Below, piece by piece: positions 4,580 to 31,933 of a stretch of 64,000 nucleotides of DNA. The stretch covers positions 124,001 to 188,000 of the IMG/VR virus record IMGVR_UViG_3300027747_002221; one strand, given 5' to 3'. The position numbers and the translations under genes were made by a program. Every line of letters starts with the position of its first letter. The stretch's first letter is position 1. The notes beneath the pieces were generated by a model. It did no database searches and was not told the origin of the DNA. It worked only from the letters and a program-made list of their open reading frames with translations.

Positions 4580-5230
4580 ATGCCATCAGCTTTAGAAAAT
4601 TTTATTTCTCAGATACGTACTTCCGGTGTTGCGCGCCCTAATAGATTTTCTGTTGAAATCTATGCACCACCCTGTATGACCAACTCAAAATTAGATGGAG
4701 TAAGTGCAATACCGCAATTAATTAATTTATATTGTCAGACTGCATCTTTTCCTGGCCAAAATATTGGCGTGAAAGATTTAAGAATAACTGGTCCAACATA
4801 TAAAAGACCAGTTAATATAGATTACGGTGGAGAGGGAATTACCCTTACTTTTTTAGTAGATGGTAAATTTAATGTAAAATCTTTTTTTGATGTATGGATG
4901 CACAAAATAATAGATCCATTTCAATTTCATGCAAATTACGATCATGAAGATACTTCATATACCACAAGTATAGTAATTAATCAAATTAATGAAGTGAAAT
5001 TCCCTGTTGCTAGAGGGACGAGAATCCTTGAGACGACTCTTGAGACACAACCTTATCGGATTGTACTCGAAAATGCTTTTCCTAGAAATATAGGAATGAT
5101 GGAATTGGATCAAAGTTCTCAAAGCACTGCTCATAAAATGAGTGTAACATTTGCTTATAGAAAATTAATTCAGGGAAGTCCAATAACTAAATCTGTAGAA
5201 TATAGTCCAATTGAACCGAATCTACAATAA
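4580..5230 (+). CDS. gp54: Baseplate tail-tube initiator gp54 (gp19-fold)
   Basis: GVARPNRFSVEI...LYCQTASFPG...ITLTFLVD...FFDVWM...AFPRNIG...VTFAYR. Confidence 0.75.
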   Translation: MPSALENFISQIRTSGVARPNRFSVEIYAPPCMTNSKLDGVSAIPQLINLYCQTASFPGQNIGVKDLRITGPTYKRPVNIDYGGEGITLTFLVDGKFNVKSFFDVWMHKIIDPFQFHANYDHEDTSYTTSIVINQINEVKFPVARGTRILETTLETQPYRIVLENAFPRNIGMMELDQSSQSTAHKMSVTFAYRKLIQGSPITKSVEYSPIEPNLQ

Positions 5231-14133: not shown

Positions 14134-14884
14134 TATCGTTTTCCTTAGTCCAGGTTACAATTTCCCATCGTCCATTATAATGTTCAACAAGAGCAGTACA
14201 AGATTCAACCCAGTCTCCGTCGTTCATATATATGATTCCATCAATCTCTTTAATCTCAGCATGATGTATATGTCCACAAATAACTCCATCATACCCTCGC
14301 TTTTTACAATATCCTGCGAGGTTGTTTTCAAACTGAAACATAAAGTCTGATGCTTTTTTTACTCTATGTTTTAAATACTTAGATAACGACCAATATCCAA
14401 ATCCAAATTTATGACGAACCCAATTAAAACGAGAATTCCAATCTAGAACTAAATCGTATAACTTATCGCCTAGAAATGCTAACCAAGGTGCAAGTCTAGT
14501 AATACCATCAAATAAATCACCGTGCGTTATCAGGTAGTGTTTACCATCAACACCTATATGTTCCGTTTGATTTTTTATTTCAATTAAACCAAAACTGAAA
14601 CCATATGGTATCATTGGCCTTAAGAATTCATCATGATTACCAGCAATGTAGATTACTCTTGTACCTCGTTTAGCGTGTCCAAGAATTCTTCGTACAACAT
14701 TGGTATGAGATTGCTTCCACCGCCATTTATTCTGTTGTATTTTCCATACATCAATAATATCACCTACAAGATATAAAGTCTCGCAAGTATTATGTTTTAA
14801 AAAATTATTTAACTTATCAGCTTGACAATCTCGAGTACCTAAATGAACATCACTTATGAATATTGTTTTATAGGTTCTTTGCAT
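14081..14884 (-). CDS. PlcP-like phospholipase C (LpxH/LpxH2-family metallophosphoesterase)
   Basis: TIFISDVHLGTRDCQA, LYLVGDIID, GNHDEFLR, HGDLFD, WLAFLGD, YWSLS, DGVICGHIHHA, NDGDWVESCTA. Confidence 0.85.
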   Translation of the reverse strand: MQRTYKTIFISDVHLGTRDCQADKLNNFLKHNTCETLYLVGDIIDVWKIQQNKWRWKQSHTNVVRRILGHAKRGTRVIYIAGNHDEFLRPMIPYGFSFGLIEIKNQTEHIGVDGKHYLITHGDLFDGITRLAPWLAFLGDKLYDLVLDWNSRFNWVRHKFGFGYWSLSKYLKHRVKKASDFMFQFENNLAGYCKKRGYDGVICGHIHHAEIKEIDGIIYMNDGDWVESCTALVEHYNGRWEIVTWTKENDNESSKNSKEVVSSVYQS

Positions 14885-14897
14885 AAGTTACCTTTAA

Positions 14898-15213
14898 ATT
14901 AATGATAGGTTATTCTGTTACGAGGAAACCTACCGAAACCCTAAGCAGTGTTTAGGCTGCTAATGCGAACTGTTCGTCGTTTGCGTTTACGTTTTTTGCT
15001 TGATTAACGGTCATCGCCTACCGTGCTGTCCACGCTGTTACTATTTGCCCTGTCGAAACCAATGTCAGGCCCATTAGAAAGAACTCTTTAGTATAGTCTA
15101 TAGCACTTGTCTGTCTCTATACAGGATGAAAAATTCTTTCTGGTGGACCTGGCGGGAGTCGAACCCGCGTCCAGAACATATTTCTCTTTGCTTCATACAG
15201 CAATAACTTACTC
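14898..15213 (-). ncRNA. ssrA: tmRNA, circularly permuted two-piece form
   Basis: Minus strand: T-arm GCGGG-TTCGACT-CCCGC and ...CAGGTCCACCA (ends 15141) come before GGGCCTGACATTGGTTTCGACAGG (starts 15072); 7-bp acceptor stem with G3:U; tag frame ANDEQFALAA-TAA (14984-14952). Outer ends are approximate. Confidence 0.95.
14901..14950 (-). repeat. Direct repeat copy A (3' part of the tmRNA coding piece)
   Basis: See 13240-13289. Confidence 0.92.
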
Positions 15214-15315
15214 TTTTACATTATAAAAAAGACTTTTTGCTATCCAGAACATATAGTTGACTACAACTAAGATGCCCCACATATAAACCCAATGCCAATT
15301 TTCAAACATAAGAAC

Positions 15316-29233: not shown

Positions 29234-29262
29234 TTGACTCCTGCCCCTTTTGGTGTTATAAT
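29234..29262 (+). promoter_or_regulatory. Plus-strand sigma70-type promoter, antisense to the ATPase gene
   Basis: TTGACT-17-TATAAT with GGTGT immediately before the -10. Confidence 0.75.
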
Positions 29263-30164
29263 TACGCACCTTGAGTAATAACATACTTAGCCAAGTTCTT
29301 CCAATTGCCACCCTCTGCGCGAATCTTTGTCGTTGCTATCAGAGTACGCAAACTCAAATTCTTGATGCTGTTCATGTTGTCGCGCAAAAAGTTGATTGCG
29401 TCTGCTTTGTACGCTGTACTGTATTCCTCGAGAAACTCAGGATCTGCTACAAGCACTTCCATGCGCTCGATCTTTTGACCTTGCGTCATGCTTAGGTCAA
29501 CGCACATTGCTCGCGAACGAACTGCTTGGTCTAAACGCTCGAGGTCTTTGTTTGAGATGAAAATAATTGTACCTGTGAACTTGAATGACCTGGGCAGATC
29601 CTCGTCTTTCATATCTGCGTTCCAGCTGATCCAACGCTCGCCGTATGAGTCAAGAGCGCCTTTAAGCAAATTCAATGCTACGGGGTCTGTCAACACACTG
29701 TCACAGTCGTCAAACACTAGCACTTGGCCGTTGCCTTCGAACAGCGTACGATACAAGCCCTTTGCTGTAGAGAAGCCTTTAATCACCTTATAAGACTTAG
29801 GTGTATTAATGCGAGCACCTACCTCAAACTTAGTGAGGTCTGTGGTGTCTGCCATGCCGTTGGTCTTAAGAGCTTTCAACACCGTGTGCGTCTTACCCAG
29901 GCCGCCTTGACCTGTGATAATTGCTGATGCGATTGTCTTTTTAGCGACCATGCCGACCATCTGCTCTACGAATTCAAAGCGCTCGTTGATACCAAATTCG
30001 GATGCCTTCTCAGTCACATCGTTCTGCACCTGACCTACCACAAAGCCCAGCTTTGCTAACTGGTCTTTTACATAAGATTCGTGTCGTGAGCGTGATACCA
30101 TTTTGCCATCTACGAAACCCTCGAAACGATTCTTGGTGCTGTTGAACTTGACTGCTATTTCCAT
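29262..30164 (-). CDS. AAA+/P-loop ATPase
   Basis: Walker A GQGGLGKT, Walker B VLVFDDCD, IIFISN, AVRSRA; start corrected to MEIAVK. Confidence 0.85.
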   Translation of the reverse strand: MEIAVKFNSTKNRFEGFVDGKMVSRSRHESYVKDQLAKLGFVVGQVQNDVTEKASEFGINERFEFVEQMVGMVAKKTIASAIITGQGGLGKTHTVLKALKTNGMADTTDLTKFEVGARINTPKSYKVIKGFSTAKGLYRTLFEGNGQVLVFDDCDSVLTDPVALNLLKGALDSYGERWISWNADMKDEDLPRSFKFTGTIIFISNKDLERLDQAVRSRAMCVDLSMTQGQKIERMEVLVADPEFLEEYSTAYKADAINFLRDNMNSIKNLSLRTLIATTKIRAEGGNWKNLAKYVITQGA

Positions 30165-30194
30165 TTTGTTTCCTTTTTGCTGTAACATGTCTTA

Positions 30195-30645: not shown

Positions 30646-30822
30646 TTACTTGCTATAATCATCTACAAAATGCATCAGCTCCTCGTAAACGCACTCATAT
30701 GCATCTGTCATTACGCTATCCAAATCATCATAGTTATCACTACAATATTTGACTGCTTCTGTAATTGAGAGACCGTTGTCTCTAGCAAAATTTGCAAATA
30801 CTACTAGGGGATGCTTACTCAT
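30646..30822 (-). CDS. Small acidic early protein (58 aa)
   Basis: Manual: MSKHPLVVFANFARDNGLSITEAVKYC...; SD and promoter upstream. Confidence 0.65.
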   Translation of the reverse strand: MSKHPLVVFANFARDNGLSITEAVKYCSDNYDDLDSVMTDAYECVYEELMHFVDDYSK

Positions 30823-30856: not shown

Positions 30857-30885
30857 ATTATAGCACATTCTGACCAAACCGTCAA
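30857..30885 (-). promoter_or_regulatory. sigma70-type early promoter
   Basis: TTGACG-17-TATAAT. Confidence 0.88.
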
Positions 30886-30971
30886 GCAAAGACCCTATAG
30901 CCGAGTAGGACATAGGGTTTTTAAAAATGCAAAAGAATGCAAATTGCAAAACTATTGTATGGGGGATTCTG

Positions 30972-31095
30972 ATAGGCGATTGCTATAATAGAGAATGCCT
31001 ATCGGTTCCTGGATTCTGATAGTCTCCGTCTATAATAGAAGCCGCCTATGGGAAATGCTCTGCAATAGACACAGACTATAATAGTCGCAGGCTAT
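30972..31095. repeat. Three spaced repeats ATAG-N7-CTAT-A-ATAG-N7-CTAT (period 47/46 bp); candidate iterons
   Basis: Units at 30972-31002, 31019-31049 and 31065-31095, in a non-coding gap of about 400 bp next to an AT-rich tract. Confidence 0.85.
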
Positions 31096-31291
31096 GAGGT
31101 TTTGATTTCAAATTTAAAAAATTAATAATAAACTCCGGGATTCTTCACCATATACACACTTTTACGCCATATAAATACCGTCTAATATAGGCTCGATTAT
31201 ACGAGCTCTTGCGAGTTCTAGATAATGCAAATCACGATTCTAGCAGCATCTTATATTGCGTTTAACTATTATAGCAACATAATACTTAACT

Positions 31292-31441
31292 CTACATTCC
31301 ATGTCTTGAGGCAACTTTTCGATCCATCTCTGAGCGCAACTCTGTAGGCAACTCTATACGTGATCCTATAGCCATGCCTATACCGTATCCTAATAGAAAC
31401 CCTATAAAAAGGCCTAATACTATGCACATAACGTATTCCAT
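31292..31441 (-). CDS. Small membrane protein (49 aa)
   Basis: Manual: MEYVMCIVLGLFIGFLLGYGIGMAIGSR... Confidence 0.5.
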   Translation of the reverse strand: MEYVMCIVLGLFIGFLLGYGIGMAIGSRIELPTELRSEMDRKVASRHGM

Positions 31442-31796: not shown

Positions 31797-31933
31797 TCTT
31801 CAAACTCCAAAAAGATATAGTATGGTACTATTAGTATACCTGTTATCGTCATCAATGCGATGCCGGCCATTAGGTATACTAGATAAAATGGTGTTAGTAC
31901 CCATTCAATTAAATCAACATCAAGACTCATCAT

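What the first reader, a model, noticed from the sequence alone, without database searches (positions are those of the whole stretch)
30886..31290. Candidate iteron-type replication origin: 3 x (ATAG-N7-CTAT-A-ATAG-N7-CTAT)
Seen: the largest non-coding gap in the window holds three units (30972, 31019, 31065; period 47 then 46 bp). Each unit is two abutting ATAG-N7-CTAT palindromes with fully variable 7-nt spacers, giving six sites with invariant geometry. The array is flanked by three TGCAAA words (30928-30950) and an AT-rich tract (about 31100-31132). Inference: a phased protein-binding array plus unwinding element, that is an origin, or alternatively a packaging, partition or nucleoid-organising site. 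The units are not CRISPR-like.
Basis: partly seen in the sequence, partly recalled or inferred. Interest (0 to 1): 0.75.

Follow-up and report, generated by a model that had tools for sequence, protein, structure and literature searches.

The report
Phased protein-binding palindromes in phage
A freshwater T4-like phage carries, in one gene-free gap, six evenly placed ATAG-N7-CTAT palindromes that selection has clearly kept as docking sites for an unidentified DNA-binding protein; they may help run a replication origin or a local switch, but neither is shown.

Summary
Three units of ATAG-N7-CTAT-A-ATAG-N7-CTAT lie at 30972-31002, 31019-31049 and 31065-31095. About 0.01 are expected by chance, and these are the only ones in the 222-kb genome.

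The genome is a T4-like myovirus from lake metagenomes with almost all genes on the minus strand. Twelve natural variants show strong selection on the tetramers and their geometry. Tetramer columns vary in 3 of 48, spacer columns in 29 of 42, and the centre only swaps A and T. This points to a DNA-level array of dimer-binding sites, not an RNA, CRISPR or coding feature.

Each 15-mer equals the LysR/OxyR half-motif (T-N11-A). The canonical OxyR spacing is not met, and the phage encodes no LysR protein.

The array is an accessory part of a larger conserved non-coding module. That module holds an A/T tract, a plus-strand TATAAATA, a GGCTCGATT core and 12-bp direct repeats. Some relatives also have tandem perfect DnaA boxes there.

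Unit number varies from two to three. Close relatives (flanking proteins 92-96% identical) lack the array. There is no GC-skew turn, no recognisable initiator and no strand-resolved transcript evidence.

My best guess is an origin-associated binding array, at about 0.35. A transcriptional operator array is nearly as likely.

The parts
30857..30885 (-). Early sigma-70 promoter (TTGACG-17-TATAAT with TG) for the small gene 30822..30646. It bounds the element on the left.
   Evidence: 11 of 12 consensus matches. It has the same design as about 30 other minus-strand promoters in the genome.
30892..30918 (.). Stem-loop (ACCCTAT / ATAGGGT) flanked by A and T runs. It is the terminator half of an early-promoter stem-loop cassette.
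   Evidence: The stem changes in a compensatory way in L045 (ACCCGTT / AACGGGT). The same hairpin-plus-promoter layout recurs at other early promoters.
30928..30950 (+). Three TGCAAA words. Two or three copies are kept in all relatives, including those without the array. Function unknown.
30972..31002 (.). Unit 1: dyads 1a (30972-30986) and 1b (30988-31002).
   Evidence: The unit is missing or hybrid in the two-unit variants L045, L048 and L011, and in a variant contig of RNA run X7.
31019..31049 (.). Unit 2: dyads 2a (31019-31033) and 2b (31035-31049).
31065..31095 (.). Unit 3: dyads 3a (31065-31079) and 3b (31081-31095). Dyad 3b is the only site that decays in relatives (CCGT or CTGT in place of CTAT).
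31096..31132 (.). Conserved A/T-rich tract. It contains a weak plus-strand promoter-like match, TTGATT-16-AATAAT at 31102-31129.
   Evidence: It is not exceptional in duplex stability. The spacer length and the -10 match vary among relatives.
31150..31158 (+). Degenerate DnaA-box position. It reads ATATACACA here and GTATCCACA or ATATCCACA in most relatives.
31170..31198 (+). Core of the module: a T4-type late-promoter octamer TATAAATA on the plus strand, followed by CCGTCTAATATAGGCTCGATT.
   Evidence: The motifs GCCATAAATA and TAGGCTCGATT persist, in swapped order, in the more distant relatives L124, L128 and L130.
31240..31260 (+). Conserved motif CTAGCAGCATCTTATATTGCG, present in one or two copies in relatives and often paired with an inverted copy at variable distance.
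31286..31358 (.). Six direct repeats with a 12-bp period, consensus (G)CAACTCT. They overlap the 3' end of the small ORF.
   Evidence: This is the only such cluster in the genome. The repeats extend beyond the ORF in L047, L048, L057 and L061, and stand without any ORF in L051 and L059.
31269..31427 (-). Gene for a 50-52-aa single-pass membrane protein that travels with the module in most relatives.
   Evidence: The conserved C-terminal peptide reads ELRSEMDRKVASRHGM.

Best explanation
The six ATAG-N7-CTAT dyads are DNA docking sites for dimers of one sequence-specific protein. Each dimer would read two major grooves 11 bp apart and ignore the spacer.

Within a unit the two dyads are 16 bp apart, on opposite faces of the helix. 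The b site of one unit and the a site of the next are 30-31 bp apart, on the same face three turns away. Bound dimers could therefore bridge neighbouring units and wrap about 125 bp of DNA into one nucleoprotein complex directly beside the conserved A/T tract.

I take this complex to be an accessory, lineage-specific control part of a replication-origin-like module. That module comprises the A/T tract, the TATAAATA/GGCTCGATT core, the 12-bp direct repeats and, in relatives, DnaA boxes. The complex would help to open, or to gate priming transcription through, that module early in infection.

Shown here: the sites exist, are unique to this locus, and their tetramers and geometry are under selection.

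Inferred: that a protein binds them, that binding is cooperative, and that the module is an origin.

The binder is unidentified. It could be a phage protein of unknown family or a host LysR-type regulator.
For: - The array is statistically real and unique in the genome.
- Across 10 array-bearing variants, tetramer columns vary in 3 of 48, spacers in 29 of 42 and linkers in 62 of 96. The centre base only swaps A and T. Fisher test for tetramers against spacers gives 2.6e-10.
- Spacer lengths of 7 and 1 never change.
- A weak symmetric preference for C at position 6 and G at position 10 fits a dyad-reading protein.
- RNA explanations fail. The stems would be only 4 bp, Rfam has no match, and core motifs occur in swapped order in relatives.
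- The origin-like context is as follows. The array sits in the largest gene-free gap of the window, next to an A/T tract nearly invariant in array-bearing relatives. The 12-bp direct repeats form a cluster unique in the genome and exist without an ORF in L051 and L059. Eight of the 11 perfect DnaA boxes found in 144 kb of relatives' loci lie 7-19 bp from the GGCTCGATT core on the same strand.
- The syntenic gap in more distant relatives holds other repeat sets, as expected if binding sites and binder change together.
- T4 precedent: oriE has 12-nt direct repeats and depends on an early promoter, and T4 origins are individually dispensable (PMC3016281).
Against: - There is no GC-skew inflection.
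- The A/T tract is not unusually easy to melt.
- The window's own block has no good DnaA box.
- No Rep, O, DnaA or Orc-like gene and no DNA-binding domain was recognised in about 30 neighbouring ORFs. There is no LysR HTH anywhere in the genome.
- T4-type replication is not known to use an initiator protein.
- The array is missing from close relatives that keep the rest of the module, and unit number varies. It is therefore dispensable.
- A dyad with only 8 of 15 positions fixed looks more like a transcription-factor operator than a classical 19-22-bp iteron.
- Metatranscriptome contigs cover the block at depths similar to neighbouring genes but give no strand or 5' ends.
Confidence: 0.35

Rival explanations
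1. The array is a transcriptional operator array. A LysR-type host regulator (OxyR-like or Nac-like) or an unknown phage repressor or activator binds the dyads. It would control a rightward plus-strand promoter (the weak TTGATT-16-AATAAT in the A/T tract, or the TATAAATA late promoter) and/or the leftward early promoter, acting as a local genetic switch.
For: - Each dyad matches exactly the published OxyR half-unit ATAG-N7-CTAT and the LysR T-N11-A box (PMC3378865).
- Relative to a start about 7 nt after the AATAAT hexamer, dyad 3a is centred near -64 and dyad 3b near -48 (and coordinates). Dyad 3b is the one that decays in relatives. This matches the strong recognition site plus weak activation site layout of LysR-regulated promoters.
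- The array lies between the leftward early promoter and plus-strand promoter-like elements.
- Plus-strand TATAAATA octamers are strongly depleted in this genome (4 against 29 on the minus strand, with about 28 expected from base composition). The conserved one at 31170 may therefore be functional.
- Relative L128 keeps one full dyad plus a half-site 16 nt further on, the same 31-bp centre spacing as between units.
- Rapid turnover among close relatives is typical of regulatory sites.
Against: - The canonical OxyR tetramer geometry, four ATAG elements spaced by heptanucleotides, is not met. Dyad centres are 16 bp apart within units.
- The phage has no LysR HTH.
- The abutting double dyad occurs only as 53 scattered single sites in 185,579 bacterial species genomes. 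There is no lineage clustering and no betaproteobacterium among them, so it is not a recurrent host operator grammar.
- The putative plus-strand promoter is weak, and its spacer and -10 vary among relatives.
- There is no plus-strand gene to regulate.
- The array lies 90-240 bp upstream of the early promoter with a terminator hairpin between them.
Confidence: 0.3
2. The array is another kind of cis-acting DNA site. It could be a centromere-like partition site, a packaging recognition site, a replication-fork barrier, or a decoy that soaks up a host DNA-binding protein as the phage genome multiplies.
For: - The array is a single clustered, phased set of sites in the genome.
- Arrays of tetramer boxes are typical of centromeres bound by ribbon-helix-helix proteins (my own knowledge, not tested).
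- An unrelated phage (G001, locus L032) has nine CTAT-W-ATAG cores at the same 16-bp period in an early-gene gap, also unique in its 82.8-kb record.
Against: - I saw no ParA/ParB-like or ParM/ParR-like genes, and T4-like phages are lytic and package by headful without a fixed site (established knowledge).
- The array is dispensable in close relatives.
- G000 and G001 share no protein at tblastn E <= 1e-3.
Confidence: 0.12
3. The units act as RNA. They would be part of a long 3' UTR or small RNA on the minus strand that ends at the 30892-30918 terminator, or of a plus-strand antisense RNA to the small membrane-protein gene, in a type I toxin-antitoxin-like arrangement.
For: - RNA run X7 holds 67% of the block's sampled words against 37% for the surrounding 4 kb, and covers 30917-31271 while the adjacent bins are empty.
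- The plus strand folds better than shuffles, z = -3.29.
- Two hairpins right of the core tolerate G-U pairs only on the plus strand.
- The neighbour is a 50-aa membrane protein resembling type I toxins.
Against: - The tetramers could form only 4-bp stems with 7-nt loops, which are not stable.
- There is no Rfam match at E <= 1.
- The minus-strand fold is not better than shuffles, z = -1.63.
- The hairpins are not conserved in L051 and L059, and core motifs are reordered in L124.
- The contigs carry no strand information, and DNA carry-over cannot be excluded.
Confidence: 0.08
4. The array is a neutral or selfish tandem repeat with no function, kept by recent spread between phages.
For: - Unit number changes by unequal exchange, and spacer sequences are shuffled between positions in different variants.
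- The module sits in a hyperplastic early region bounded by recombination-prone promoter cassettes.
Against: Neutral drift cannot explain 45 of 48 invariant tetramer columns beside 29 of 42 variable spacer columns, nor the strict 7/1/7 geometry in variants whose spacers are entirely different, such as L047.
Confidence: 0.05

Closest known systems
Phage lambda origin (four dyad-symmetric O-protein iterons next to an A/T-rich region) and iteron plasmid origins (P1 oriR, pSC101)
   Same: Both have several phased copies of a binding site, and in lambda the sites are dyad-symmetric. An A/T-rich tract abuts the sites. DnaA boxes are part of the plasmid-type design, and they occur in this module in some relatives. 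Each is a single locus per genome.
   Different: - Only 8 of 15 positions are fixed here, whereas nearly the whole 18-22-bp iteron is fixed there.
- No cognate initiator gene was found.
- The host genome is a T4-like phage, whose known origins work without an initiator.
- The array is dispensable in close relatives.
- The window's own copy has no DnaA box.
Phage T4 origins: oriE (12-nt direct repeats, early promoter) and oriF/oriG (promoter plus downstream unwinding element, R-loop primer)
   Same: This is the same virus family. The T4 origins are individually non-essential. Repeats and promoters are combined in one region, and oriE is transcribed in both directions at different times (PMC3016281). 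This module also has 12-bp direct repeats and oppositely oriented early and late promoter elements.
   Different: - T4 oriE lies inside gene 5 and has no palindromic array, and the role of its repeats is unproven.
- This phage lacks MotA and AsiA, so it has no middle promoters.
- No strong promoter sits directly upstream of the A/T tract.
- There is no positional homology to any T4 origin.
OxyR / LysR-type regulator operators (ATAG-N7-CTAT, T-N11-A)
   Same: The half-unit is identical: ATAG, seven free bases, CTAT. Site quality is unequal, with strong 3a beside decaying 3b. Host OxyR is known to bind phage DNA; a Pf1-type prophage gene is listed among ChIP targets in PMC3378865.
   Different: - Canonical sites have four ATAG elements each separated by seven bases, with dyad centres about 22 bp apart. 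Here the two dyads abut with one base (16 bp), and units are 30-31 bp apart.
- There are six sites in tandem rather than one operator.
- The phage has no LysR gene.
- Bacterial genomes hold no equivalent arrangement.
Early-promoter stem-loop cassettes of T4-type phages
   Same: The hairpin at 30892-30918 plus the consensus promoter at 30885-30857 has the same design as many other early promoters in this genome. The genes downstream of it differ between relatives.
   Different: This explains only the left flank of the finding, not the palindromic array.

Membership tests
Iteron-type (initiator-dependent) replication origin | Several phased copies of one binding site | tested here: met
   Six dyads with invariant 7/1/7 geometry and a 46-47-bp unit period.
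Iteron-type (initiator-dependent) replication origin | Adjacent easily melted A/T-rich unwinding element | tested here: inconclusive
   An A/T tract at 31096-31132 abuts unit 3 and is conserved. More than 100 genome regions are equally unstable in 30-bp windows.
Iteron-type (initiator-dependent) replication origin | Cognate initiator gene next to or spanning the repeats | tested here: not met
   About 30 neighbouring ORFs have no Rep, O, DnaA or Orc domains and no DNA-binding domains in Pfam or PHROGs. The syntenic AAA+ gene (29262-30188) belongs to a family found across T4-like phages. Its single-sequence model was unusable, with pLDDT 33.
Iteron-type (initiator-dependent) replication origin | DnaA boxes | tested here: not met
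   The window's block has none within one mismatch. Relatives L047, L048, L057, L061 and L128 have one to two perfect boxes (two to three with near-matches) beside the core.
Iteron-type (initiator-dependent) replication origin | Strand-composition switch at the origin | tested here: not met
   Cumulative GC skew falls monotonically across the whole genome. Skew here follows the one-strand gene orientation, so this is a weak test.
Iteron-type (initiator-dependent) replication origin | Replication starts there | not testable with these tools
   This needs marker-frequency data from infected cells.
T4-type R-loop origin (promoter plus downstream unwinding element) | Active promoter immediately upstream of the A/T tract, firing into it | tested here: inconclusive
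   No consensus promoter points into the tract. The TATAAT centres of the units lack -35 elements, and their centre base flips between strands in relatives. MotA and AsiA are absent.
OxyR / LysR-type operator | Dyad ATAG-N7-CTAT with T-N11-A | tested here: met
   All six sites match. The motif is as described in PMC3378865.
OxyR / LysR-type operator | Four ATAG elements each spaced by seven bases (two dyads about 22 bp apart) | tested here: not met
   The dyads within a unit are separated by one base, with centres 16 bp apart. Between units the centres are 31 and 30 bp apart.
OxyR / LysR-type operator | A LysR-family protein available to bind | tested here: inconclusive
   The phage encodes none (PF00126 search). 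The host is unknown (the tmRNA suggests a betaproteobacterium) and would be expected to have many.
CRISPR array | Identical 25-40-bp repeats separated by unique spacers of similar length | tested here: not met
   The conserved parts are 4-bp words, the variable parts are 7 bp, and the units are palindromic.
Structured non-coding RNA | Conserved secondary structure with covariation, or an Rfam match | tested here: not met
   Rfam has no match at E <= 1. Only 4-bp stems are possible in the units. Motif order is permuted in L124.

The most novel reading that the evidence does not exclude
A T4-like lytic phage lineage uses an initiator-type origin. A so-far unrecognised phage protein would bind a palindromic iteron array beside an unwinding tract. 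In sister lineages host DnaA would bind tandem DnaA boxes in the same module. The binding-site sets would be swapped between close relatives as specificity cassettes.
Probability: 0.15. Interest if true: 0.75.

Novelty: new variant of a known kind. Interest (0 to 1): 0.5.

Why it matters
Replication origins and site-specific DNA-binding regulators are essentially unknown for the very abundant environmental T4-like phages outside T4 itself. The AAA+ protein family encoded next to this module has more than 6,000 members in public metagenomes.

This locus offers a clean target that natural variation has already mutagenised: eight fixed bases per site, free spacers and strict spacing. That makes it suitable for pulling out the binding protein and for asking whether these phages start replication or switch transcription in a way T4 does not.

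If the binder is a host LysR-type regulator, this would be a new way for a lytic phage to read or blunt host physiology.

Tried and rejected
- **tRNA and Rfam scans of the block:** no match; the window's only hit is a tmRNA at 14.9-15.2 kb, far from the block.
- **RNA folding of both strands:** no consistent structure involving the units.
- **Promoter reading of the CTATAATAG centres:** rejected. There is no -35 element, and the centre base flips between A and T in relatives.
- **MotA-box reading of the linkers:** rejected, because the genome has no MotA or AsiA.
- **Phage-encoded LysR regulator:** none found.
- **T4 DsbA homologue as the binder:** it is present in the window, but the family is widespread in T4-like phages without such arrays, and in T4 it binds A/T-rich late-promoter DNA only weakly. 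It remains only a weak candidate.
- **Homology of position to T4 origins:** none.
- **BLAST of the block against 50,697 cultured phage genomes:** no match.
- **Scan of 185,579 bacterial species genomes for the double dyad:** only scattered single sites.
- **Shared protein between this phage and the unrelated phage with a similar 16-bp-period array (G001):** none.
- **The seventh palindrome at 31817 as an autoregulatory site:** it lies inside a coding frame.
- **Small ORF on the plus strand of the block:** its frame would not survive the 47-bp unit loss seen in the two-unit variants (reading the sequence).
- **Structure of the neighbouring AAA+ protein:** the single-sequence prediction failed, with pLDDT 33, and I did not pursue it.
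- **Metatranscriptome contigs:** they show the block is present in RNA libraries but give no strand, no ends and no proof of transcription.

Full report
**What is there**

The window is bases 124,001-188,000 of a 222,055-bp IMG/VR virus record. Its two ends overlap, so the assembly closes on itself.

Structural and replication proteins place it among T4-like myoviruses:
- A virion protein about 40% identical to those of cyanomyoviruses.
- gp33, DsbA, gp59 and RNase H.
- DNA ligase and ribonucleotide reductase.

The DNA comes from freshwater lakes.

About 257 of 282 ORFs that I called crudely lie on the minus strand, and cumulative GC skew falls monotonically.

The phage uses two promoter classes:
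- Near-consensus sigma-70 promoters, usually preceded by a stem-loop. There are 24 perfect TTGACA-N16-18-TATAAT on the minus strand and none on the plus strand.
- T4-type late promoters, TATAAATA. There are 29 on the minus strand and 4 on the plus strand.

It has no MotA or AsiA.

**The observation**

Three units of ATAG-N7-CTAT-A-ATAG-N7-CTAT lie at 30972-31002, 31019-31049 and 31065-31095. Shuffles of the window give 0.01 such matches even with two mismatches allowed. The genome has no other copy.

The 15-bp palindrome occurs 13 times in the genome. Six of these are in the array, and the rest are at about the chance rate.

Part of them has an ordinary explanation. The inverted repeat at 30892-30918, followed by the promoter at 30885-30857 on the minus strand, is the same terminator-plus-early-promoter cassette that precedes many early genes here.

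**Comparative evidence**

Pattern scans of IMG/VR and JGI metagenomes returned 21 loci with the same non-coding module (L010, L011, L025, L041, L045 and L047-L062), three of them identical to the window's; the 18 that I compared with the window fall into 12 distinct array-region sequences. Ten of the twelve carry the array, with two or three units. RNA run X7 also holds a two-unit variant.

Comparing orthologous units:

| Column class | Variable columns |
|---|---|
| ATAG/CTAT tetramers | 3 of 48 (all three in site 3b) |
| 7-nt spacers | 29 of 42 |
| Linkers between units | 62 of 96 |
| Centre base | 3 of 3, but only A or T |

The Fisher test for tetramers against spacers gives 2.6e-10.

Variant L047 has entirely different spacers yet the same geometry. 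Across 27 distinct sites there is a weak symmetric preference, ATAG-n-C-n-n-n-G-n-CTAT.

This is the signature of half-sites read by a dimeric protein. It rules out drift, coding and RNA stems, since only 4-bp stems would be possible. Rfam finds no match in the block.

**The array is one part of a larger module**

To its right lie, in order:
- A nearly invariant A/T tract (31096-31132).
- A degenerate DnaA-box position (31150-31158).
- A plus-strand TATAAATA (31170-31177).
- The motif CCGTCTAATATAGGCTCGATT.
- A variable hairpin insert.
- The motif CTAGCAGCATCTTATATTGCG (31240-31260).
- Six direct repeats of (G)CAACTCT with a 12-bp period (31286-31358). These overlap the 3' end of a 50-52-aa membrane-protein gene.

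The 12-bp repeats form the only such cluster in the genome. They continue beyond the ORF in L047, L048, L057 and L061, and occur without any ORF in L051 and L059.

In L047, L048, L057, L061 and the more distant L128, two or three DnaA-box matches (one or two of them perfect TTATCCACA) sit 7-19 bp right of GGCTCGATT. Eight of the 11 perfect boxes in 144 kb of relatives' loci are at that spot. The window's own copy has none.

In L124 the TATAAATA and GGCTCGATT motifs occur in swapped order. This argues for separable DNA motifs rather than one folded RNA.

**How old and how necessary is the array?**

The module always sits upstream of the same AAA+ ATPase gene (29262-30188), which is 86-99% identical among the close relatives. 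That protein family has more than 6,000 metagenomic members.

| Relatives | AAA+ identity | What fills the gap |
|---|---|---|
| L059, L051, L130, L133 | 86-92% (other flanking proteins up to 96%) | Core and 12-bp repeats kept; array replaced by three TATAATA-centred inverted repeats |
| L134 | 80% | Three AGAGT-AATA-ACTCT palindromes |
| L128 | 80% | One ATAG-N7-CTAT plus a half-site 16 nt further on |
| L129 | 75% | Different direct and inverted repeats |

The palindromic array is therefore lineage-specific and dispensable. A repeat-rich gap at this position is a family trait.

**What the motif resembles**

The 15-mer is exactly the published OxyR half-unit, described as four ATAG elements spaced by heptanucleotides, and it fits the LysR T-N11-A box (PMC3378865).

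The canonical tetramer spacing is not met. Dyad centres are 16 bp apart within units and 30-31 bp apart between units. The phage has no LysR HTH. The abutting double dyad occurs in 185,579 bacterial species genomes only as 53 scattered single sites. The resemblance is therefore to a class of site, not membership of the OxyR regulon.

An unrelated phage record (G001, locus L032) has nine CTAT-W-ATAG cores at the same 16-bp period in an early-gene gap. The two phages share no detectable protein.

**Tests of the origin idea**

In favour: the unique locus, the phased sites beside a conserved A/T tract, the direct repeats, the DnaA boxes in relatives, and the T4 precedent. In T4, oriE has 12-nt repeats and depends on an early promoter, and origins are individually dispensable (PMC3016281).

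Against:
- No skew turn.
- An A/T tract of ordinary stability.
- No DnaA box in this genome's block.
- No initiator-like or DNA-binding domain among about 30 neighbouring ORFs.
- The array's absence in close relatives.

T4's oriE lies inside gene 5 and is not positionally related.

**Tests of the operator idea**

A weak plus-strand promoter-like match, TTGATT-16-AATAAT at 31102-31129, would put dyad 3a near -64 and the decaying dyad 3b near -48. That is a LysR-like layout. However, the match is weak, its spacer and -10 vary among relatives, and no plus-strand gene follows it.

The plus-strand TATAAATA at 31170 is one of only four in a genome that otherwise purges them. A late antisense or primer transcript starting there is plausible but unproven.

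Metatranscriptome contigs cover the block but carry no strand information.

**Verdict**

The array is real and under selection as a set of dimer-binding DNA sites. Its role is unresolved.

| Reading | Probability |
|---|---|
| Accessory binding array of an origin-like control module | about 0.35 |
| Transcriptional operator array | about 0.30 |
| Other cis-acting site or decoy | about 0.12 |
| RNA-level role | about 0.08 |
| No function | about 0.05 |

It is a new variant of a known kind of element, in a virus group where such elements have not been described.

Noticed in passing
window 14879-15244 (-): The phage carries a permuted (two-piece) betaproteobacterial-type tmRNA gene. Rfam beta_tmRNA scores 134 bits and tmRNA_permuted 138 bits, and ARAGORN reads the tag peptide as ANDEQFALAA. 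This hints at a betaproteobacterial host.
   Followed up: partly
window, ORFs between about 9 and 23 kb and 56 and 62 kb (not all mapped): A Pfam summary of the small ORFs shows heme oxygenase, a ferredoxin-dependent bilin reductase, IscU (NifU_N), two IscA-like proteins, rubrerythrin, ferritin, PhoH and a SegE-type GIY-YIG endonuclease. This is an unusual iron, redox and pigment gene set for a phage whose tmRNA suggests a non-cyanobacterial host.
   Followed up: no
window 31286-31358; also L051, L059, L047, L048, L057, L061: Direct repeats of (G)CAACTCT with a 12-bp period, five to nine copies depending on the relative. They partly encode a four-residue repeat in the tail of a 50-aa membrane protein, but they also occur outside any ORF.
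   Followed up: partly
L047, L048, L057, L061, L128 (7-19 bp right of GGCTCGATT): Tandem perfect DnaA boxes (TTATCCACA) 11-12 bp apart, all on the same strand, in the homologous module of relatives. The window's own genome has none at this place.
   Followed up: partly
whole genome G000; window 31170-31177: The late-promoter octamer TATAAATA occurs 29 times on the minus strand but only 4 times on the plus strand, against roughly 28 expected per strand from base composition. Antisense late promoters therefore seem to be selected against. One of the four survivors is in the conserved block.
   Followed up: partly
L032 578-715 (record G001, 4782-4910): An unrelated 82.8-kb phage record has nine CTAT-W-ATAG cores at a strict 16-bp period in a gap between small early genes with consensus promoters. 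This is the same site grammar as here, and it is unique in that record.
   Followed up: partly
L038 1-1500: A 175-kb viral contig has ATAG-AAGATGY-CTAT repeats (one 15-mer is identical to a site in L011). They are embedded in a long array of A/T-rich modules about 280-360 bp long that also contain large palindromes. Their nature is unknown.
   Followed up: no
L129 (about 2.3-2.9 kb upstream of the AAA+ gene), L134 (about 0.4-0.7 kb upstream): More distant relatives carry other repeat sets in the syntenic gap: TTTGCTAAT five times with AAACTAG..CTAGTTT palindromes in L129, and three AGAGT-AATA-ACTCT palindromes in L134. The repeat sets turn over while the gap persists.
   Followed up: partly
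window 29262-30188 (-): This is a 308-aa AAA+-like ATPase (PHROG 1250, with a weak clamp-loader match). It has more than 6,000 metagenomic homologues and about 30% identical homologues in enterobacterial T4-like phages, and is always syntenic with the module. Some sources label it 'ribonuclease HII'. Its function is unknown.
   Followed up: partly
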